From Selaginella moellendorffii (Eukaryota > Plantae > Lycopodiophyta), in NCBI RefSeq assembly GCF_000143415.4, contig NW_003314316.1, positions 666,230 to 677,524 of the forward strand: DNA of 11,295 bases. Direction: 5' to 3'. Position numbers and translations under genes: made by a program. The notes beneath the pieces were generated by a model. The model ran no database searches, had not been told where the DNA came from, and saw nothing but the letters and a program-made list of their open reading frames with translations. Shown here one piece after another: positions 1-11,295 of the stretch. Position 1 is the stretch's first letter, and the number at the start of each line of letters is the position of its first letter.

Positions 1-50
1 TCCTTGTAAGCTATTAGATGATGCATAAGTACATAAAGTTTTACCTTGCA

Positions 51-216
51 AAAATCCTCCACTAGATCTCGTGCGTACGCTACGTTCTTCTCCGGTTCCC
101 ATGTTGCTTTGCAGCATGGAAATCCTTTCCACTTCAGAGTAGAACTCCCTCACCTCGCATTTTTGTCGCTTGCTCTTGTGCGCATTAAAGATGGCCTCAA
201 CTTCATATTCCTCTTC
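51..216 (-). pseudogene. Canonical (group I-type) chromodomain at the integrase C-terminus
   Basis: Manual translation: EEEYEVEAIFNAHKSKRQKCEVREFY / 1-nt frameshift / LKWKGFPCCKATWEPEKNVAYARDLVEDF. Contains the Y-EVE, KWKG and TWEP chromodomain hallmarks. Confidence 0.9.
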
Positions 217-269
217 CCCTTGGATAACCCCAGGTAGAAGTCTTATTTAGTCCTTGCGAAGCAGATCCT

Positions 270-1480
270 CAAAGTATGGCTTAAGTAAGTTCACGTGGAA
301 CACAAGGTGCATCTTCCCCATCTCCCGAGGAAGTCGGAGGCAGTAAGCCACCTTACTAATTCAAGCCTCAATCTTATAAGGCCCCGTAAACCTGCTTAAG
401 GAACTTAAGATCAGTTCATTTCCAGAAATACATGCATTTTACTTTTGGGTTAACTTTTGGCTGATCCCACTTGATAACTTTAGGTTCTTAGTGTTCAGCC
501 ACACCTTATCCCTAGGTTGGAACTCCACATCCCGGTGCTTCTGGTTTGCATATTTAGTTTGTCTTTATTGAGCTTGTTCTAAGGAATCCCTCACTAAATT
601 CCAAATGTTGAGTTTTTCTATCGTGAATGCTTCCACTGTAGGTAACTCTCCATGATACTCGGCCATGCTGAGTTCCATAGGACTTTCAATAGCTTGTCTA
701 TTAATGACTTCCCATGGATTCACCTTGATACTCGAATGTGATGAGTTGTTATAGCACATTTTCACAAGTTCCAAATGAGTTACCCAATCAATCTAGTCTC
801 TGGAGACATAGCATCGCAAATAATCCTCCAGTTGCCTATTCACCCTTTTTGTTTGTCCGTCTGTCAATAAGTGTGAGTGCCATCAAACTTGATTTAATAC
901 CCAATACCTGTCTATGGGTGATATGTTGTGTTGAATTTCAACTTGATGTGATATTATTCTAGGAAAGTTCTCCAAAGCTTACTGGTGAAGATCTTATCTC
1001 AATCTAAGATGATCTCTTCTAGCCTTCCCCACACTTGAACCACTTGTTTAAAGAATAGCTTTGCCACACCTTCCGCATCCACTTCTGTTGTGGTGGGTAT
1101 GAAATGTGCCATTTTCAAAAACTGGTTCACCACCATAAATATCACATCAAACCCCTCACTTGGGGGGAGTCCTATGATGAAATCCATCGTAAGACATTTC
1201 CACAAACAATCTGGAATTGGGAGGCTTTGTAACAAGCCCCTAGTAGCTTTAGTCACGATTTTGACCTACTGATATATTGGATATGTCTTTCATAGTCTTG
1301 GATGTCCTTAGCCATGTCTGGCCAATGATACTTCCTCTTGAGTAAGCCCATTGTCTTGGGCACTTTGCCATGTCTTGCAAGAAGTTTATCATAACACTCT
1401 TTTAAGACTACTTTCCTTAGTTCCTCTTCTGGAACATACACCCTTGTTTGTTTATAATAGATGAGTCCATTGTGTTCTGC
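270..1480 (-). pseudogene. Integrase: degenerate zinc finger, DDE core and GPY/F motif
   Basis: ORFs 1253-1555, 999-1256 and 565-774, plus manual translation of 270-400 (RFTGPYKIEA*ISKVAYCLRLPREMGKMHLVFHVNLLKPY). The HHCC cysteines are lost at the frameshift near 1256. Confidence 0.92.
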
Positions 1481-1649
1481 ATAACCTATTTTCTCTTCCG
1501 TTGGCAGCTCACCTCTTTGGTGAGCATCCCGCGCCTCTTGGTTTTTTAGCAACACTTCTTGTGCTAGACCATCTTTCTTATATGATGTCTACACATCATC
1601 CCAAAAGGTTGTTGTCGCGCTAGATATTGCCAACTTCAAGCTTGCCTTT

Positions 1650-2026
1650 CGACTTAAGGCATCTACTATGATGTTACTCTTTCTAGATTTATACAAAATC
1701 TTGCAATCAAACTTGGCTAAAGCATTGGCTCACCTCCCTTGCTTTCCTCTTAGGTTGAGCTATGACAAGAAGTGTTTTGTTGCCACATTATCTGTGTAAA
1801 TTTTAAAGTGCTTCCCAAGGTAGTGTCGCCACTCCTTAACCACCACAAATAATTCCTTCTCGTGGGCAGGCCACTTTCGCTGAGCCTTGTCCACCTTCTT
1901 CGAGAAGAATGCCACTGGATGGTTATCTTGCTTCAAAATTGTGCCCAATGCAAAGTCTGAAGTGTCCGTTTTTACTTTGAAGTCCTTTCCAAAGTCTGGT
2001 AATGCCAATATAGGAATCTTCTTCAA
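1650..2026 (-). pseudogene. RNase H domain of Ty3/gypsy pol
   Basis: ORF 1760-2026 (ILALPDFGKDFKVKTDTSDFALGTILKQDNHPVAFFSKK...HEKEL...WRHYLG...TDN) continues past stops to ...FDCKILYKSRKSNIIVDALSRK. Confidence 0.92.
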
Positions 2027-2030
2027 CTTC

Positions 2031-2779
2031 CCTTTGACTAACCAAATGGGAAAAGGGAGTTAGTCTCTGGGATAAGCTCAAAACTTACTAAATATGGAAT
2101 GTCCTTAGATTGCAAATTTGGATATGGGACGAGCACCATTGTGTTTAGGATAATCTCTACATTCCATAGATATGCCAAATGAGCAAATCTAGACACTTTC
2201 CATAAATAGCATTTGGGACCGAAATGAGACTAACACAAAGGGCATGATAGTGAGGGTGTTTGGCAGGCACAATAAGCTATCATCCAGCAATATTGAGGGA
2301 CTAGTCTCAATATGCAAGGGTTCTTGTTAAGCCAGTGCAAGACAAAGCAAAAGATAACTAGCAAGTCGGGCCAAGTATGCTTGGCTAAATAGACACTTAG
2401 GAATTCCATCCTTATGCTCATCCTCATCCAGCCAAGTACAGATGCAAAGTCCAATTTACTAACACTTGAACAAAAGGGGCTGATAAAGGATCCAGGCAAC
2501 CTTCCACCCCTTAGGACCACTTGTTCATGTGATGAAAATACCAACTCATCCTCTAAGTACACCCCCAACTCCTTGGGTTGTTCCAGCATTTATTAGAGGT
2601 AGCCCTGGCTACCATTTCAAGGACTTGTGTCTTCTTCCGTATTTGACCTCCCACGGTCATCAATTCCAGTCTCAAATTTATGAGCACCAGCCCCAACTAT
2701 ATGAGGGTAATCTTGTGACTCCTTTATTGTTTTAGAGTCTGCATCTTGCCTGTAATCCCAAAGATAGTTGTTTACTACA
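2031..2779 (-). repeat. Truncated 5' LTR of element D
   Basis: Starts TG on the minus strand. 2056-2495 is the reverse complement of C-LTR 5142-5576 (roughly 85% by eye, with a 6-nt CTCATC duplication in D). Joined to pol near 2030. Confidence 0.72.
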
Positions 2780-3237
2780 CTTGGAGGAGTCTCATTCACA
2801 ACCTCCATAAGTCCCAGTTAGGACTTGGGGCTTGCTAACCACGAGAATGGCATCTATTCCACTCAACTTTAGCACTTGGTCCAAGTGCTCCACGTGTCCG
2901 ATCCCATGATCGACACCCCAAGGTGCCACTGACGTATCGGCCTATTACGCTAAGGCCATGCCCATTTACCTTGGTCACATTGGTGGTCCAACACCACATA
3001 CATTCCAATCCCGTCTCTCAAAGACTGAGTCATCCATCCATGAGTGATTATCCCAGATCCACTCCTTAACATCCTTAGGATGCCTACAAACATGGGGAAT
3101 AGCCTTCCTCAATATCTCCGTTCTGGTCCTCACCAAGTCCCTTTCTGTCCTTGGCTGTGTTCGCCAACAACACCACTGGATCAAGGCCCACTGGCCCGAC
3201 CACTAAATCCCACTATCCTTTAGGACTTCCTCACCGT
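2780..3237 (-). repeat. Host LTR fragment (same family as solo LTR B, opposite orientation), left part
   Basis: Reverse-complement match to 4502-4959, e.g. CTTGGAGGAGTCTCATTCACAACCTCCA vs TGGAGGTTGTGAATGAGACTCCTCCAAG, and CCACGTGTCCGATCCCATGATCGACACCCCAAGGT. Confidence 0.88.
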
Positions 3238-3467: not shown

Positions 3468-4019
3468 GAGTCCGAGATGGAGTCCGAGATGGACCCGAGT
3501 TGGGGTCCGAGGTGGAGTCCGAGATGAAGTCCGAGATGGACCGAGACGGAGTCCGAGATGGAGTCCGAGATGGACTGAGACGGAGTCCGAGATGGAGTCC
3601 GAGGTGGACCGAGACGGAGTCCGAGATGGAGTCCGAGGTGGACCGAGACGGAGTCCGAGATGGAGTCCGAGATGGAGTCCGAGATGGAGTCCAAGATGGA
3701 GTCCGAGATGGACCCGAGATGGAGTCCGAGATGGAGTCTGAGATGGACCCGAGGTGGAGTCCAAGATGGACCCGAGATGGAGTCCGAGATGGACCCAAGA
3801 TGGAGTCCGAGATGGACCCGAGATGGAGTCCGAGATGGACTTGAGATGGAGTTCGAAGTCGAGACCGAGACCGAGACCGGGACCGAGACCGAGACCGTGA
3901 TCGGGACCGAGACCGAGACCAAGGCCGAGGCTGAGACCGAGCCCGAGCCTGAGTCCGAGTCCGAGTCCGAGTCCGAGTCCGAGTCCGAGTCCGAGTTCGA
4001 GTCCGAGTCCGAGTCTGAG
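3468..4019. repeat. Compound tandem repeat: 12-mer GAGTCCGAGATG/GACCCGAGATGG array, then (GAGACC)n and (GAGTCC)n hexamers
   Basis: Directly visible periodicity: 12-mer domain ~3468-3850, GAGACC domain ~3861-3940, GAGTCC domain ~3951-4019. Confidence 0.97.
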
Positions 4020-4020
4020 A

Positions 4021-4089
4021 GGGTGAAAGCCCAAAGCGTTCGTCTCCCAGACCCTGGGGGGTTTGGTGAGCTCCAAAAGTATAGTAGGG
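4021..4089 (+). promoter_or_regulatory. Putative LTR core promoter of B (GGGTGAAAGCCCAAAGCGT ... GTATAGTAGGG)
   Basis: Both boxes recur identically in the otherwise dissimilar C LTR (5596-5614, 5664-5674). TATAGTAGG resembles the TATAAATAGG box of plant LTRs. Function is inferred. Confidence 0.5.
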
Positions 4090-5014
4090 GGAGGACTGCA
4101 GTGGAGCCAGTTTGGCCAGGAAAGGCCAGTTTGGCCCAGGAAGGCCGGACCCAGTGTTGGGTGATGAGCTGCCCACTGGGAAGTCCAAGACTAGAGTGAA
4201 CACGGACCGACAAGTGGGGTAGCTTCGTGAAGTGTTCAAGAGCCGGCTTTAGTTCCCCCGGGAGATCGACTGGCCGATGCTCCCAGTCCAAGTGTGGGTG
4301 GCACTACCTACTTGGATACCTGTCGTGGCTCAACGGAACCTCGCTCTAAGCCCATGGCTAGAGCACCTAAAGGCGAAAGGCGGGGAGAGTACCCATGAGG
4401 CTTGCGTAAGGCCATGGTGTTCCGAAATGTTGTCCCAAAGTCCCAGACTATGGAAAGGAAGAGGAGTAGCCCTCTGGTGTGGTGACAAAGGACACGGTCA
4501 CCCAGTGAGGAAGTCCCAGAGGACAGTTGGACTTAGAGGTCGGGCCTGTGGGCCTTGATCCAGTGGCAGTGTTGGCGAACACGGCCATCGACAGAGAGGG
4601 ACTTGGTGGGGACCGGAAAAGAGATATTGGGGAAGGTTATTCCCTAAGTCTGCGAGCATCCTAAGGATGCTAAGGAAAGGATCTGGGATGATCCCTCATG
4701 GATGGATGGCCTAGTCTATGAGAGACAGGATGGCAATGTAGGTGGTGTTGGACCACCAGCGTGACCAAGGTGAATAGGTATGGCCTCAGCGTAACAGGCC
4801 GATATGTCGGTGATACCTTGGGGTGTCGATCATGGGATCGGACACGTGGAGCACTTAGACCAAGTGCAAAGGTTGAGTGGTATGGATGCCATTCTCGGGG
4901 CTAGCAAGCCCCAAGTCCTAACTGGGACTTGTGGAGGTTGTGAATGAGACTCCTCCAAGTGGTCGGAGGTGTGGTTAAGTGACTAAAGTAAAATGGAAAA
5001 ATTAGTCCCTTACA

Positions 5015-5045
5015 ACCGTGTGACTGTGTCCTTGGTCACCACACC
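5015..5045 (-). repeat. Host LTR fragment, continuation between insertions B and C
   Basis: After the second ACCGT copy, 5020-5045 (GTGACTGTGTCCTTGGTCACCACACC) matches the reverse complement of 4476-4501 at 24/26 nt, resuming the alignment interrupted at 3237. Confidence 0.88.
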
Positions 5046-5595
5046 TGTCGCGAATGTGACTTCGGGTATCGAAAGTTACCTGTCGACTAGTCCTTACGGA
5101 CACTCTTACCTTACTGCCACGATGGCAGGAGGTCGGTATTGCTGGTTCCCTTTATTAGCCCCTCTTGTTCAAGTGTTAGTAAACTGGACTTTGCATCTGT
5201 ACTTGGCCGGATGAGCATAAGGAAGGAATTCCTAAGTGTCTATTTAGTTGAGCATACTTGGCCCGGCTTGTTAGTTCTCTTTTGCTCTGTCTTGCACTGG
5301 CTTGACAAGAACCCTCACGTATTGAGATTGGTCCCTCAATATCGCCGGATGATAGCTTACCGTGTCTGCCAAACACCCTCGCTATCATGCCCTTTGTGTT
5401 AGTCTCATTTCGGTCCTTAATGCTATTTATGGAAAGTGTCCAGATTTGCTCATTTGGCATATCTACGGAATGTAGAGATCGTCCTGAACACAATGGTGTT
5501 CGTCCCATGTCCAAATTCACAATCTAGGGACATTCCATATTTAGTAAGTTTCGAGCTTGTCCCAGAGACTAACTCCTGGTACTAAGGGTGGCTTG

Positions 5596-5674
5596 GGGTG
5601 AAAGCCCAAAGCGTGTGTTCCTCAAGGGGGGGGGGGGGGGCGGGGCTGTGGGGGGTTCCAAATGTATAGTAGGG
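5596..5674 (+). promoter_or_regulatory. Putative LTR core promoter of C with an intervening G-tract
   Basis: GGGTGAAAGCCCAAAGCGT (5596-5614), G15 (5626-5640), G4 and G6 runs, then GTATAGTAGGG (5664-5674). The boxes are shared with B. Confidence 0.5.
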
Positions 5675-6066
5675 ATAGTGGGTAGGTCGGGCATGGCCGA
5701 CCAACCTGAGGCATAGTCTAGCTCCCGCTTGCGTGCCTGTCCTTGTTCTGCGTCCGGCTTGGGTCTAAGCCCAAGTTTCATTCCATGCTAGTTGGTGGAG
5801 TACCCATGTCCTCGCGTTAGGCCACCGGTATGCCGAAATAGCGCCAGACTCCGTTTGGCTCCGTTTTGCGTGCTGGTCCTGGCATTGGGATGCTGGTTGC
5901 TCCAGGACTGTTCCAAGTCGCTCCGGGCTCCTGTCCCTTCGCTCCTTGGGCTTCATGCTCGGGAGTTGCTCCGTGGTTCGGTTCCGTCACTCCTTGGCTC
6001 CATGCTTGGGAGTTTGGCACCGTTCCTTCGTTCAGTGGCCCAAGGCCCTGAACTTCGGGTTCCTAT

Positions 6067-6118
6067 GGACACGTGGCATGGACACGTGGCATGTGACACG
6101 TGGCATCTGTCACGTGGC
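6067..6118. promoter_or_regulatory. Four tandem G-box/ABRE motifs (CACGTGGC)
   Basis: GGACACGTGGC 6067-6077 and 6080-6090, TGACACGTGGC 6094-6104, GTCACGTGGC 6109-6118. A further CACGTG lies at 6190-6195. Confidence 0.7.
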
Positions 6119-6204
6119 ACAAAGAGGGTTTAAGTTCCGCTTCGTGGTGTTATCCTATGGTAAATCACCATAGGATAAAGGGTCAAAACCACGTGCGCTA
6201 CATT

Positions 6205-6215
6205 TGGTATCAGAG
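6205..6215 (+). other. Primer-binding site, tRNA-iMet
   Basis: TGGTATCAGAG, 2 nt after the LTR-terminal CA. This is the standard plant initiator-Met PBS. Confidence 0.95.
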
Positions 6216-9200
6216 AATGAGTCTCAGCGAGTACTATTCAATGAGATTGGGCAACTAGTCTCGTTGCATACGCAGAGATGAAAACGATGATCCGAGTGGG
6301 TACACATTTGGTGCAAAGGGTTCACATTCGTTCCTTGGGTATGGTTTTGGTTACCTTTTGTACCTAACAATGTGAGCTTGCTCTTGGGCTCATAGGATGG
6401 ATTTGAGATGCTCCGTTAGCACGAGTTTGAGCTTGGGCACATTAGCAACTCGAGGTTACACTTTGAGTTGGCAGGATTAATGTTAGCCTATCGGTGGTTC
6501 CATAAGTTGTTCCGTGTACCGTGGGTGAAAGTAAACCTTCCCTGAGTTTGCTATGAGTGGCAAATAGGCTGGTCCGTAGCTGTTTAGCACAGCACTAGTG
6601 GATCCTTCCTAGGCATGGTTACAAGTGGATCAATCAAGTCTATAGGGATAAGTCTATTGATTCAAGTAATCATTGCCGTGCTCTCTCATAAACTTTTCTT
6701 GGATTGGACTGAAGGCAGTGCGAAAGAAAGCTTGAGGTTTAGTCAAAGATGAGACCGAAAAGAGAGTCATCGGGGACGGAGGATCAAACACGTAAATCAT
6801 CTTTTCTTCTTGGAGAGATGATTTGCAACGAAGTGTTAACTCATTGCTCGTGTTCACATCATGCAATCAAGAGTCCCTACCTTGATGCATCTTGGAGATG
6901 ATGGTCTTACAAATGGTGAGTTGTGGGATGGATAGCGGTGAAGCGCTAAACCATTTTGTATAGGCTTACTATTGGAAGACTTGAGTTACAATGCTCAATT
7001 CTTTTCCAGGGAACCTTGCTATTGTTCCTTGAGTAGCTTGGTGTTGGGTTAAGTTTTGAGTTTGGTCGGAAAGCGAGTGGCATGAGCTTGTCCGTGTTAT
7101 GAACAAAAGTTAGTGGTGTTGGGTGTTGTAAATCTCTATTGGTGGAGTGTGGCATTTATGTTGCATTTTGTCGAGTTGAGTTGGCACTTGATATTCATGT
7201 AAACCTTTGAAGTAATGACATTGGCATTGCTCGTGGTGTTGCTCAATTGATGATCAAGTCATTGTGATACTTATATCATATCCATGTGTTAGTGAGCAAT
7301 GTGTTTACGAAGTTGCTTGGTTAAACGATGATCAACCCCAAAGTGGTTGATAGTGAAGCCAGTCTACTTGCATGAAGTAGCATTGTAGTAGCTTTGATTG
7401 GATTCTCGATGGTGGTCCATTATGCTAAGCTTAAGTTGGTTCCTTGTTTCCTTGAGGGTTTGCCCATAAGGTGTTGGAAAGGGTTGTAGCATTCATTTGC
7501 TATAGCTTGTTGGTTTATCCGTTAACACTTGGAGTAGATTGTTGGATGGAAAAGGTGTGTAGTTAAAGCATTGATATCACTAGCACTTGTGTTAGTGGAA
7601 GTGGCATTGTTACTTCGAGTGATGAGGAATTTTCCTTAGAGCTTGATTTTCTATGTCATTTTTCTTGTTAGTGTTTTAACTTCACATTGGATCTTGAAGG
7701 TGGTTGAAGAAAAGTGTTAGTGCAATATGGATATCCGAAGATGTGGTCTTCGTGATCAAGCCTTGGATGTTCCATTTGCATTTTACGGATGTCGGAGTTG
7801 GATGTCGAAAGTATGGGCAAAAAGATGTTCGAGGCTTAAGCATACTATGGATCATGAGAATTTGTGTTGAGGTGAACCTATGTGAAGTTGTTAGTAGGAG
7901 GAAGTTGGTTGAGTCTTGAAAGTTTGGATTCCTGGACTGAGAGTTATTCTTTCTCTAGGATGGAAATTTTCCACAAATTTTCTTAGACTTTTCCAATAGC
8001 TGATCTGTTGATCATTTTGTCCGAAAACCATTCCGTTTTCATAAGCCAGCACAAACTAGTGAAATGGTTGGAGTTGACTTCAGTTGGCTTAAACCTTAGT
8101 AGGTAGTTTGTATGATGCAGCCCGAAAAAGATGCTGACTTTTGGAGCTAAGGCAATTGAGTTGGATAGAGTCTGGAGTTGGTATAGAAAAGTGGCTGTTG
8201 CGCTTTTCTAAGAAGGGTGATCCTTGTACCTTTCTTTTGTAGCGTTGTGCTTGGTGGCAGGTTGCACTTTGTATTTCGTTAGACTCTATGAGAGTAGTGA
8301 ACTCTCACTGATCTTGACTTGGTCTTGGTGGCCCTGCACCTTGGCTAAGGATGGTGATGTTCAACTTAGTTGTTTGAGTTTGAGATGTTAGTACCCATAC
8401 TATAGCTTTGTCCAAGTGGAGGTTGTGTACCGATATGAGTCCATCATATGGTTTTCACTTTAGTTTCGACTAAGTGTTGATCATGCATAGCTAGCCTCTT
8501 CAAGGCATGCTCAGAGCTAGTGGCTAAATGCATTGGTGAGCTTATCGCGGTTGAGTTGGATTCGAGTGGTCATTTAGTTTGTGCTTGTCTATGAACCTTT
8601 ATCTCGTCCATGAGGTATTACGTTCATGTTGGACAAGTATATGACTCAATGACATGAGTTAGTGTTTGGGTCTTGTGAAAGGCAAGACAAGTGATTGTTG
8701 GTTGCTTTGTGACTAATAATTGCTTGTAGACTTTGTCAAGGGCTTTTGACACTTACTTCACTCGATGATGATTTAGTAGTGATGGGTTTGTTTTACCTGT
8801 TGGTGTTGCGGAGGATCATGTCGCTAGACTTACATGGTTTCTTTTCCATGTTGGCATATTGACTCTACCTCTGTCAATATCATTTGGTTGCGTTTAGTTC
8901 GTAGTGTTAGATTTCATTAAGTCTTGGATGTGGTGAATCACTCCTTGATGAAGTGTTATCTGTGACTGAGTATTGTTGAGAGATTGGTCTCAGATACTGA
9001 GTAAAGTATCTCCGACTTTGGTTAGCTTAGTTGCTAGAGAGCTTTGAGTGGTGATTCACTCGTGCTTTCTTCTAGCTTTGTTCTAGTGTTGGTGGCACTG
9101 AGGTGATGCCTTGTCGTTGACATTGTTGATGTTGAGATTTCAGTGAAATGAGATGTCTCTCCGCAAGATTGATGTTGAGTTTCATTAGTCTTAATGAAGA

Positions 9201-11162
9201 TAGTGTTGATGATTTGGCTATGGCTTTGTGTTATTGGCATTCGTACATTTGTTAGTTCGCAACTATGTTGACGTTCAAATGAACTAAGTGGCAAGTTTGA
9301 GTTAGTTGTGTCCAGACGAGATTGTTTAGTAAGGGTTGAGCTTTGAGCTTTTCCTTGAAAAGTGATTCAATTGTGGACTATGCTAACTCTACAAGCGGAA
9401 GAGTTAGTGATTGATATTGGAATGTTTGAATCCTTATTGGATTTGAGTTGGAATATATCGATCATTGATGATTCTTCTTGTGCTTGTTATGAAGTGAGTT
9501 ACGTCTTGCTATAGATGAATTCATGGAGGATCGTTTGGTGATCACTTGTTGAGCATAGCTTCATTATGCTTAGCCTTTGGATTGATGCAGGCATGCTCTT
9601 CATTAGCTTTGGCATTATGAAGTTTGGCTTATGGATATATTGAGGAGGATATTGTGGGTTGCACCATGATTTCTTCTTTAGCATTGAAGTTAGTTCGTGC
9701 GAGACTCGTGATCATTATTAGGCAAGACTTGGCTATAGACTTCTTCGAACTTTTGGTTATTTGAGTTTTCATGCTCATTGTTCCATTTGTTAAGAGTTGT
9801 TGGGGGAAGGCATTTTGGCTCATTAGCTTCGATGTTGACGTTAGTCTTTGCATCTAGCAATCATTGGTGATGATTGACTATCATCTAAGATAGTTGATTA
9901 TCCTTGTCAAGGGTTTTGCTTGATTATTGTTGGTATAGAATGATTTGCTGTTCTTCAGGATGGTAAATTCTTTCTTTAATGATAATTATGCATTTCTCTC
10001 TTGTTAGGATGATTGATGATCTTTCATGGTGGTTATTTGTTCTCTTTGATGGCTTATAGCTTTTCGCAATATCACATGTTATTTGTGGTTTGCTTTGGAT
10101 TGGTCTCTTGGGTTTGAGACATCCATAGGATGTTGCTGATGCTTGCTTGAGCAACTCTAGTTCCTTGGTATTGTTGACCAGGATCTATTCAGATTGACTT
10201 CTATGATAGTTGGCATGAATGGGTGTTTGTTGGTCTTACCGCATTCATTCTATTCTGTTGATTATTGCTTGAGTTGGTTCTGATAGTTTGGGATGTTATT
10301 TCCTTCGGGTGATACATTCGCGAGCATTGTGCTTGTTAGTCAATGATACTTTGTGTCTTTTGAGTTATCTCTAGTAAGTTATTGGCTTACTGTCTACTAT
10401 CTTCGGTAGTTAAGTTTCATCATTGAGTTTACTTGATGATATACTTGCTATTGAATTTTGTTGGATGGTGAATCTTATGTTTACAAATTTTGATGATCTT
10501 GGTGGTTCCTATACTATACTAGTTTATCGGATGATAACTTGCTTAGAATACTTTTGTGTTCTACTCTAAGATTTAATCATTGGTAATTAAGTCTCTAAGA
10601 TATCATTGTCTCTGACTTTAATATTGTCCATCTCTTGATCTTTGAGTTTGGGCCAGTAATGAGCAGACTGGCTTCGGCACTTCATGTGCATGTTGAAATC
10701 TCTAGTCATGGGGTAGCTACTGTCGACTGGTCACATAACCCGCCTCTTTGTCGATGTTCCTTATTCCGTTAAAAGGGCGTGACCGTGTAAACAACTCTAA
10801 CTGCCTGTTTACAGTAGTCTATCTAAACCTTACCGACGGGTTTGGTTTCTTTGCTCAGGAGGGTTGGGGCCTCTAGTTTCTCTCTCTATGTCTCTGCGGG
10901 CAGGGCATATCACACTTTTGTAAGCTGGGTGACTCCCAGAGCAGCAGGGGTGGCTGACTCCGTTGGTCATTTCCTTGTCGGCGACGGCCGGAAGGTGTCT
11001 GAGCTGGTAGCGCATCCGCGTTAGACAAAGAGGTTGCCCCCTAACTCATTTAAGTTGGTGCATTTCTCACATAGTGTGAGTACCGTGAACTTTTTTCTGG
11101 AGTTGTTTCCTTGGCGGTATTCTAGACTCGAGTATGCATCAACGAGGACATCGATCTTCCCT
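6216..11162 (+). ncRNA. Non-coding, G/U-rich, hairpin-dense internal domain of element C (candidate structured RNA)
   Basis: Many stems with G-U pairs, e.g. 6239-6266, 6792-6826, 8687-8727 and 9869-9902. No protein motifs. Structure was inferred by eye. Confidence 0.55.
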
Positions 11163-11174
11163 AGGGGGGGAGAG
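11163..11174 (+). other. Polypurine tract
   Basis: AGGGGGGGAGAG directly abutting the 3' LTR start. Confidence 0.93.
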
Positions 11175-11295
11175 TATTGCGAATGTGACTTCGGGTATCG
11201 AAAGTTACCTGTCGACTAGTCCTTACGGACACTCTTACCTTACTGCCACGATGGCAGGAGGTCGGTATTGCTGGTTCCCTTTATTAGCCCCTCTG
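11175..11295 (+). repeat. Start of the 3' LTR of element C (cut by the window edge)
   Basis: 118/121 nt identical to 5046-5166. Differences are at LTR positions 2 and 4 and at the last base of the window. Confidence 0.95.

What the first reader, a model, noticed from the sequence alone, without database searches (positions are those of the whole stretch)
6216..11162. ~5-kb non-coding retroelement cargo that looks like one large, strand-specific structured RNA
Seen: no gag/pol between a valid PBS and PPT, a strong T/G skew (line 10441-10500: 29 T, 15 A, 11 G, 5 C), and hairpins along the whole length. Examples: 6239-6250/6255-6266 (12 bp, 3 GU, GCAA loop); 6310-6321/6353-6364 (12 bp, 2 GU); 6792-6806/6812-6826 (15 bp, 3 GU); 8687-8705/8709-8727 (19 bp, 6 GU); 8856-8863/8873-8880; 8911-8921/8944-8954 (11 bp, 2 GU); 9033-9076; 9382-9390/9400-9408; 9869-9882/9889-9902 (14 bp, 3 GU); 10544-10551/10556-10563; 10786-10793/10806-10813. 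Deviations from perfect palindromes are G-U on the + strand, which would be A-C mismatches on the - strand. Symmetric DNA decay of palindromes should give both types. Established: LARDs are non-autonomous LTR elements with non-coding internal domains proposed to be structured. Inference: a parasitic genomic RNA selected for folding (packaging, stability or silencing evasion) and mobilised in trans by a chromovirus. Caveat: GU-rich sequence raises the chance hairpin background.
Basis: partly seen in the sequence, partly recalled or inferred. Interest (0 to 1): 0.85.

Follow-up and report, generated by a model that had tools for sequence, protein, structure and literature searches.

The report
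Hairpin-rich non-coding LTR retroelement interior
This is one copy of a hugely abundant plant LTR retrotransposon that carries about 5 kb of non-coding, T/G-rich sequence instead of genes; its RNA strand holds somewhat more wobble-tolerant hairpins than chance, which hints at selection on RNA folding but does not prove it.

Summary
There is a 5' LTR (5046-6204), a tRNA-iMet PBS, a PPT and the start of a 3' LTR (11175). The 4.97-kb interior has no recognisable gag or pol and a strong T/G skew. Every listed hairpin is exact.

The hairpin signal is real but modest.
- Plus-strand stems of 12 bp or more number 19, against 5.0±2.2 in shuffles.
- A shuffled sequence of this composition already folds into as many hairpins, with as many G-U pairs.
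- 120-nt z-scores (+ -1.5, - -0.7) do not differ significantly from neighbouring TE sequence.

Three results still favour a plus-strand-specific, family-level feature.
- A strand-blind stem search finds an excess only in the interior.
- Transition mismatches in those stems are G·U 89 to A·C 15, against 2.8:1 expected (P=0.003). A decayed DNA inverted repeat in the same window gives 40:36.
- Changing this copy's private differences back to the family majority stabilises the folds.

No RNA was detected in public transcriptomes. No other full copies could be fetched, so covariation is untested.

Verdict: a LARD-like non-autonomous element. Selection on RNA folding is plausible (about 0.45) but unproven. 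First-stage readers noted hairpin-rich non-coding LTR interiors, probably this family, in other windows of this genome.

The parts
5046..6204 (+). 5' LTR (TG...CA, 1159 bp)
   Evidence: 5050-5165 is identical to 11179-11294. It ends in CA two bases before the PBS. Contig depth over the LTR part laid (from 5300) is about 2 to 3 times that of the interior.
6068..6119 (+). 3.8 tandem copies of a 14-mer with an ACGTG core (G-box-like), a candidate promoter element in the LTR
   Evidence: Tandem Repeats Finder. The promoter role is inference.
6150..6178 (+). Near-perfect 29-nt palindrome at the LTR end, just upstream of the PBS
   Evidence: Self-inverted blastn hit, 90%.
6207..6217 (+). Primer binding site, TGGTATCAGAG, which I recall as complementary to the 3' end of plant tRNA-iMet
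   Evidence: Sequence read directly. The tRNA match is from general knowledge.
6239..6266 (+). Leader hairpin, 12 bp (3 G-U) with a GCAA loop; candidate packaging or dimerisation signal
   Evidence: Window 6205-6324 has z -3.64 on + and 0.02 on -. The role is inference.
6205..10640 (+). Non-coding, non-repetitive T/G-rich domain with an excess of local wobble-tolerant hairpins
   Evidence: Composition. No Pfam hits. No internal repeats. Stem excess and G-U:A-C asymmetry. MFE is 18-32% below shuffles on + and 4-20% on -.
8687..8727 (+). Longest hairpin: 19 uninterrupted pairs (13 WC, 6 G-U), UUU loop
   Evidence: (z -4.81 on +, 0.09 on -). It lies in the part of the family with the lowest depth.
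9403..9469 (+). 15-bp stem enclosing a second 9-bp hairpin
   Evidence: window 9385-9504 has z -6.15 on + and -3.59 on -.
9869..9902 (+). 14-bp hairpin (3 G-U)
10641..11162 (+). 3' part of the interior: much weaker skew than the T/G domain, no folding excess, higher copy depth
   Evidence: Composition. MFE is only 5% below shuffles on both strands. Depth.
11163..11174 (+). Polypurine tract AGGGGGGGAGAG
   Evidence: Sequence.
11175..11295 (+). Start of the 3' LTR, cut off by the window end
   Evidence: The family majority has G at 11176, which restores the TG start.

Best explanation
The stretch is the interior of a very high-copy, non-autonomous LTR retrotransposon of the LARD kind. It has LTRs, a tRNA-iMet PBS, about 5 kb without genes, and a PPT. 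It must be copied by the proteins of an autonomous Ty3/gypsy-type helper.

Its first 4.4 kb is unique, T/G-rich sequence. The plus-strand RNA of this part forms a chain of local hairpins in which departures from Watson-Crick pairing are almost only G-U.

Most likely these hairpins are kept in the replicating lineage by selection on the genomic RNA, for packaging, dimerisation, reverse transcription or stability. Under such selection, A-to-G and C-to-U changes in stems are tolerated while G-to-A and U-to-C are removed. This would itself push the strand towards G and U.

Shown: the element anatomy, the lack of coding capacity, the abundance, the stem excess, the G-U bias, and the family-level origin of the folds.

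Inferred: selection, the role of the structure, and the helper.
For: - Anatomy.
- No gag or pol: 30 pieces give no Pfam hit, while 88-100-aa pieces of the neighbouring chromovirus are recognised. tblastn with the neighbour's RNase H, integrase and chromodomain pieces gives only noise. Rfam finds nothing.
- Abundance: 121,924 contig pieces of one DNA run lie on 6 kb, and the family is also in a second organism.
- Stem excess on +.
- Strand-blind stem search: 64 against 38.8 stems (at least 7 WC pairs) and 30 against 14 (at least 8) in 6205-10640, with no excess in four control regions.
- Mismatch bias: G-U 89 to A-C 15, against 2.8:1 expected, P=0.003; controls are symmetric.
- Neutral control: the decayed DNA inverted repeat in the same window gives G·T 40 to A·C 36.
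- Family-level origin: changing 34 private differences to the family majority letter changes local + folds by -29.5 kcal/mol. Random changes of the same kinds give +12.8±9.0, and none of 60 controls reaches the observed value. On the - strand the figures are -12.4 against +6.7±8.0.
- Folding energy: excess of -46 to -72 kcal/kb on + against -7 to -25 on -.
- Literature: LARDs are said to specify conserved RNA secondary structures (PMC7215508, citing Kalendar 2004).
Against: - Neighbouring TE sequence in the window also folds 9-14% better than its shuffles. 120-nt z-scores of the interior + strand (-1.54) do not differ significantly from those controls (-1.14; P=0.32).
- The number of hairpins and of G-U pairs equals shuffles, and the excess lies in Watson-Crick pairs, which also stabilise the - strand.
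- The - strand has almost no statistical power for G-U stems.
- Unpaired positions are even more T-rich (.455), so structure cannot explain the whole skew.
- Part of the skew is not special to this domain. The LTR shares the T>A skew, and third codon positions of the neighbouring chromovirus share a G>C skew.
- No RNA was seen: 1 read and 0 reads in two RNA runs of 9.2 million reads each, though the organism's presence in those runs was not verified. Sixteen runs guessed to be RNA hold next to none of its words.
- The evidence rests on one copy plus 34 consensus positions. Covariation is untested.
Confidence: 0.45

Rival explanations
1. Neutral by-product. The interior is junk cargo. The replication cycle (transcription, RNA or single-strand deamination, G:T mispairing by reverse transcriptase) pushes the plus strand towards G and T. 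Short inverted repeats arise as in any sequence. Because the pressure turns A-T and C-G pairs only into G·T, the hairpins survive on the plus strand without any selection.
For: - Background folding excess of 9-14% in all neighbouring TE sequence, and z-scores not distinct from it.
- G-U pair and hairpin counts equal shuffles.
- The T excess is strongest at unpaired sites.
- T>A skew is also present in the LTR and the 3' part of the interior. G>C skew is also present at third codon positions of the neighbouring chromovirus.
- About 23% G-U in the top stems is what a skew of this size would give.
- No RNA was seen.
Against: - The variation among copies shows no directional bias: A>G 104 against G>A 101, and C>T 73 against T>C 48. 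This fits symmetric C deamination.
- The strand-blind stem excess is confined to the interior.
- Stems of 14-19 uninterrupted pairs need transversions, indels and reverse transitions to have been rare or removed.
- The model does not explain why palindromes were there in the first place.
Confidence: 0.38
2. The T/G richness is selected for something other than folding. One candidate is dense binding of the helper's zinc-knuckle nucleocapsid, which in retroviruses prefers UG-rich single strands (from memory, not checked). Another is a dispersed short protein-binding motif. Under this reading the hairpins are secondary.
For: TTGAGTT occurs 14 times on the plus strand of the domain (1.9 expected) and never on the minus strand. 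GTTGG, GAGTTGG and GTTAGT are also enriched. Unpaired sites are U-rich.
Against: - 14 equals the largest count of any 7-mer in 200 shuffles, so the motif signal is only borderline once all 7-mers are considered.
- There is no consistent position of the motif relative to the hairpins.
- No binding data exist.
- It does not explain the G-U over A-C bias in the stems.
Confidence: 0.1
3. The interior is a simply decayed gag-pol, in sense or antisense, as a first-stage note (s1-346915) proposes for another non-autonomous family in this genome.
For: None found here. Open pieces are slightly longer on the minus strand (up to 110 aa), as its low T content predicts.
Against: - No Pfam hit in the 30 longest pieces on both strands.
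- tblastn with chromovirus RNase H, integrase and chromodomain pieces gives only noise.
- blastn finds no similarity between the interior and the pol fragment at 1-2040.
- The family is conserved in this form in over 100,000 contig pieces.
Confidence: 0.03

Closest known systems
LARDs (large retrotransposon derivatives, e.g. Sukkula of barley; Kalendar et al. 2004, as cited in PMC7215508)
   Same: LTRs, PBS and PPT around a conserved internal domain several kb long that encodes no protein. High copy number. Presumed trans-mobilisation. The internal domain is said to specify conserved RNA secondary structure.
   Different: From memory, LARD LTRs are about 4.5 kb with a 3.5-kb interior; here the LTR is 1.16 kb and the interior 4.97 kb. 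There is no sequence relation that I could test. A T/G skew and a G-U over A-C bias are not features I know to be reported for LARDs. The original paper was not held.
Retrozymes (non-autonomous plant LTR elements with hammerhead ribozymes; PMC4918200)
   Same: Non-coding interior. From memory: a tRNA-Met PBS, a PPT, a highly structured RNA, and a presumed gypsy helper.
   Different: No hammerhead or any other Rfam family in the window. The element is about ten times larger. No circular RNA evidence.
TRIMs / Cassandra
   Same: Non-autonomous LTR elements with PBS and PPT. Cassandra-like TRIMs were noted by first readers elsewhere in this genome.
   Different: TRIMs almost lack an interior (under about 1 kb in all, from memory). 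This element has no 5S-like sequence in its LTR (Rfam).
Genome-scale ordered RNA structure (GORS) of some RNA viruses (from memory)
   Same: Folding energy below shuffled controls along kilobases of a replicating RNA, without discrete known motifs.
   Different: GORS is described for coding viral genomes. Here the RNA is non-coding, and the excess over the local genomic background is small.

Membership tests
LTR retrotransposon | Two direct long terminal repeats with TG...CA ends | tested here: met
   5050-5165 is identical to 11179-11294 (100%). TG at 5046 and CA at 6203-6204. The 3' LTR starts TA, but the family majority has TG. Only 121 nt of the 3' LTR are in the window.
LTR retrotransposon | PBS next to the 5' LTR and PPT next to the 3' LTR | tested here: met
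   TGGTATCAGAG two bases after the LTR end; AGGGGGGGAGAG directly before the 3' LTR.
LTR retrotransposon | Target site duplication | not testable with these tools
   The 3' end of the element lies beyond the window.
LARD (non-autonomous large LTR element) | Internal domain of several kb without gag, pol or env | tested here: met
   4.97 kb. No Pfam hit in 30 pieces. tblastn gives noise. Positive control.
LARD (non-autonomous large LTR element) | Structurally uniform, abundant family | tested here: met
   121,924 contig pieces at 88-100% likeness in one run, and present in a second organism. Deletion variants exist.
LARD (non-autonomous large LTR element) | Conserved RNA secondary structure of the internal domain | tested here: inconclusive
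   Family-majority letters stabilise the predicted folds, and there is a strand-specific G-U bias. No alignment of copies could be made, so there is no covariation test.
LARD (non-autonomous large LTR element) | Mobilised in trans by an identified autonomous partner | not tested
   No partner LTR or leader is in the window. The neighbouring chromovirus fragment is a separate, truncated element.
Retrozyme | Hammerhead ribozyme in each LTR | tested here: not met
   Rfam cmscan at E<=1 finds no ribozyme.
TRIM | Miniature size with almost no interior | tested here: not met
   LTR 1.16 kb, interior 4.97 kb.

The most novel reading that the evidence does not exclude
A retrotransposon family that fills several percent of a plant's assembled repeats carries 4.4 kb of non-coding RNA under purifying selection for a chain of G-U-tolerant hairpins. 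This is a GORS-like state in a cellular parasite. The strand's G+U richness would itself be the footprint of structure-preserving drift (A-U to G-U to G-C). The same property would leave the antisense strand unable to fold and keep the stems imperfect as DNA or dsRNA.
Probability: 0.35. Interest if true: 0.65.

Novelty: new member of a known kind. Interest (0 to 1): 0.45.

Why it matters
Non-autonomous LTR elements can outnumber their helpers, yet what makes their gene-less RNA a good substrate is unknown. If the hairpin chain is selected, this family is abundant, young and conserved in two organisms. It would then be a convenient system to ask what a helper's Gag and reverse transcriptase recognise. 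It could also show that a base-composition skew can be a read-out of RNA-level selection.

If the signal is only a by-product of mutation bias, it is a useful warning. A G/U-rich strand looks tiled with hairpins by composition alone, and several first-stage readers of this genome reported just that.

Tried and rejected
Searches for other copies, all blank:
- Two exact-pattern scans of metagenome contigs (PBS junction; 3' hairpin) found nothing.
- Protein-space searches with an interior ORF and with the neighbour's RNase H piece found no candidates. Encoding contigs could therefore not be fetched.
- Read laying gives only per-site majority letters, not linked sequences. Covariation could not be computed.

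Other dead ends:
- The original LARD paper (PMC1470764) is not held.
- Literature searches found no report of T/G skew or G-U bias in LARD interiors.
- A span-limited fold of the whole domain timed out, as did the first z-score run. Both were replaced by 300-nt chunks and 120-nt windows.

Ideas rejected:
- Decayed gag-pol in either orientation.
- Internal tandem or dispersed repeats as the source of the hairpins: self-blast and autocorrelation show none.
- Known RNA families or tRNAs.
- Post-insertion decay as the source of the skew: variation among copies fits symmetric C deamination, which erodes G rather than building it.

A first test of WC-seeded helices showed no extension beyond the first mismatch. 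The strand-blind stem search that replaced it did show the asymmetry.
Full report
**Anatomy**

The window holds one LTR retrotransposon from 5046 to beyond its end.
- The 5' LTR runs from TG at 5046 to CA at 6204. Bases 5050-5165 are 100% identical to 11179-11294.
- The PBS TGGTATCAGAG lies at 6207-6217. From general knowledge it is complementary to the 3' end of plant tRNA-iMet.
- The polypurine tract AGGGGGGGAGAG lies at 11163-11174.
- The 3' LTR begins TA at 11175. The family majority has G at 11176, which restores TG.
- The interior (6205-11174, 4970 nt) falls into two parts. A T/G-rich domain spans 6205-10640 (A .231, C .146, G .250, T .373). A last 534 nt shows much weaker skew.

**Coding capacity**

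- No ORF in the interior exceeds 86 aa, and no stop-to-stop piece exceeds 110 aa.
- The 30 longest pieces on both strands give no gag, protease, RT, RNase H or integrase hit in Pfam at E<=1.
- As a positive control, 88-100-aa pieces of the broken chromovirus at 1-2040 are recognised at once (RT_RNaseH 3.5e-20, Integrase_H2C2 2.1e-11).
- tblastn of that chromovirus's RNase H, integrase and chromodomain pieces against the interior gives only short, non-colinear noise.
- blastn finds no similarity, and Rfam and ARAGORN find nothing.
- The interior is unique sequence with no internal repeats or periodicity.

The decayed gag-pol alternative is close to excluded, in sense and in antisense.

**Abundance and expression**

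- In one DNA run of the source organism, 121,924 contig pieces lie on 5300-11295 at 88-100% likeness. That run has 2.8 million contigs.
- A second organism's run holds 4,660 pieces with the same majority letters.
- Depth over the LTR is two to three times that of the interior, and many deletion joints exist.
- Two RNA-seq runs labelled as the same species gave 1 and 0 reads out of 9.2 million each. The presence of the organism in those runs was not verified.
- Sixteen further runs of the same species label, from eight studies and guessed to be RNA, hold next to none of the words of 8400-10640.
- No transcript is therefore documented. For a silenced transposon this does not argue strongly either way.

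**The observation**

Against dinucleotide shuffles made in blocks of 30 to 250 nt, uninterrupted WC+GU stems on the + strand are in excess:

| Stem length | Observed | Shuffles |
|---|---|---|
| >=10 bp | 54 | 27 |
| >=12 bp | 19 | 5.0±2.2 |
| >=14 bp | 8 | 1.1 |

Selected windows reach z -3.4 to -6.2 on + and 0 to -3.6 on - with 200 shuffles.

**How special is it?**

Less than it looks.
- A shuffled sequence of this composition is already 64% paired, with 80 hairpin loops and 320 G-U pairs.
- The real sequence is 68% paired, with 76 loops and 318 G-U pairs. The gain is in Watson-Crick pairs, and it also stabilises the - strand.
- Summed 300-nt folds are 18-32% more stable than shuffles on + (-46 to -72 kcal/kb) and 4-20% on -.
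- The dead chromovirus pol, the inverted-repeat arm, 4020-5045 and the LTR show 13-14% on + and 9-12% on -.
- Mean 120-nt z-scores are -1.54 (+) and -0.69 (-) in the domain, against -1.14 and -0.88 in the controls.
- The + against - difference within the domain is significant (P=0.001). The difference from the controls is not (P=0.32).

That criterion is not met. Even so, z-scores alone do not set the domain apart from its surroundings.

**What does set it apart**

1. A strand-blind search was run for runs of purine opposite pyrimidine with at least 60% WC pairs, so that G·T and A·C are treated alike. In 6205-10640 it finds 64 stems against 38.8 in shuffles (at least 7 WC pairs) and 30 against 14 (at least 8). 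None of the four control regions shows an excess.

2. In those stems the transition mismatches are G·U 89 to A·C 15, where composition predicts 2.8:1 (P=0.003). At 9 or more WC pairs over the whole interior the ratio is 32:2, and at 10 or more it is 17:0. After subtracting the chance stems, the surplus stems carry essentially only G·U. Controls are symmetric.

3. The 87-91% inverted repeat 2056-3234 / 4505-5576 has G·T 40 and A·C 36.

4. For 34 interior positions, nearly all other copies carry another letter than this copy. Changing them to the majority letter changes local + folds by -29.5 kcal/mol. The same kinds of change at random sites give +12.8±9.0, and none of 60 controls is as low. 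On the - strand the values are -12.4 against +6.7±8.0. The folds therefore belong to the family's ancestor and are being eroded in this copy, with a larger effect on the + strand.

**Selection or mutation bias?**

Under selection for + strand pairing, A-to-G at A-U pairs and C-to-U at C-G pairs are neutral, while G-to-A at G-C pairs and U-to-C at U-A pairs break a pair. Pairs would then drift among A-U, G-U and G-C, and the strand would become G+U-rich with U-A about equal to G-C. The observed values are .142 and .104. That is an inference, and it fits only roughly.
- Unpaired sites are even more T-rich (.455).
- The LTR shares the T>A skew.
- Third codon positions of the neighbouring chromovirus share a G>C skew of .086, though they have A>T.

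Against a pure mutation-bias account:
- The variation among copies is not directional (A>G 104, G>A 101, C>T 73, T>C 48). It fits symmetric C deamination acting on a strand with more G than C. That process erodes the skew rather than making it.
- Stems of 14-19 uninterrupted pairs require other kinds of change to have been rare or removed.

A bias that acts only during retrotransposition cannot be excluded without an alignment of copies. I put selection on RNA folding at about 0.45 and the neutral by-product at about 0.38.

**Mechanism proposed (inferred)**

- Transcription starts in the 5' LTR, where a 14-mer with an ACGTG core is repeated 3.8 times at 6068-6119.
- The RNA is primed by tRNA-iMet.
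- The leader hairpin at 6239-6266 (GCAA loop; z -3.6 on +, 0 on -) is a candidate packaging or dimerisation signal.
- The T/G domain folds into independent local hairpins. These may help packaging by a helper's Gag, keep the RNA compact and stable, or keep its stems imperfect.
- No helper can be named from this window. The chromovirus at 1-2040 is a separate, truncated element.

**Comparison and novelty**

The element meets the working definition of a LARD: LTRs, PBS and PPT, several kb of conserved non-coding interior, and high copy number. LARDs are already said to specify conserved RNA structures (PMC7215508). It is not a retrozyme, since no hammerhead is found, and it is not a TRIM. I file it as a new member of a known kind. 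The composition-controlled G-U over A-C asymmetry is the interesting addition.

First-stage readers noted hairpin-rich non-coding LTR interiors, probably the same family, in at least seven other windows of this genome. Those notes are unchecked and are not independent support.

**Limits**

The evidence comes from one copy plus 34 consensus positions. No linked sequences of other copies could be obtained, and no RNA evidence exists.

Noticed in passing
window 1-2040, minus strand: Broken Ty3/gypsy chromovirus pol: RNase H, integrase zinc finger, integrase core and a chromodomain-like end (the chromodomain was read by eye, not scanned). It has stops and frameshifts and is cut off at about 2055, where the inverted-repeat arm begins.
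   Followed up: partly
window 2056-3234 and 4505-5576: Large inverted repeat, 87-91% complementary. Its right arm runs across the start of the 5' LTR (5046). About 164 nt around the LTR start (4962-5125) have no counterpart in the left arm, which has about 270 other bases there. I could not explain how an LTR part and its upstream flank come to be duplicated together in inverse orientation. Mismatches are symmetric: G·T 40, A·C 36.
   Followed up: partly
window 3468-4013: Tandem array of a 12-mer (GAGTCCGAGATG, about 34 copies) that passes into CGAGAC hexamers, at the centre of the inverted repeat. It creates long spurious ORFs on both strands, up to 362 aa.
   Followed up: no
window 4476-4501 and 5020-5045: 26-nt inverted repeat (92%) whose right copy ends exactly at the base before the LTR start. 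It could be the ends of a 570-bp TIR element or a stem. No target duplication was seen.
   Followed up: no
window 4020-4450 and 5590-5870: Read by eye, 4020-4450 looks like a diverged direct copy of LTR part 5590-5870, including the GGTGAAAGCCCAAAGCG start and a G run (17 G at about 5627-5643). blastn at E<1e-3 did not report it.
   Followed up: no
window 6205-10640, plus strand: TTGAGTT occurs 14 times (1.9 expected), often as TTGAGTTGG, and never on the minus strand. GTTGG, GTTAGT and GAGTTGG are also enriched. 14 equals the largest count of any 7-mer in 200 shuffles, so the signal is borderline.
   Followed up: partly
window 6150-6178: Near-perfect 29-nt palindrome at the very end of the LTR, about 30 nt before the PBS.
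   Followed up: no
window 8700-8899, 9900-10299, 6300-6499: Contig depth of the family drops to a quarter to a half of the rest of the interior, and many contigs join distant points (for example 6305 to 7967 and 6590 to 9006). The family is therefore a mosaic with deletion derivatives. The longest hairpin (8687-8727) sits in the least-shared part.
   Followed up: no
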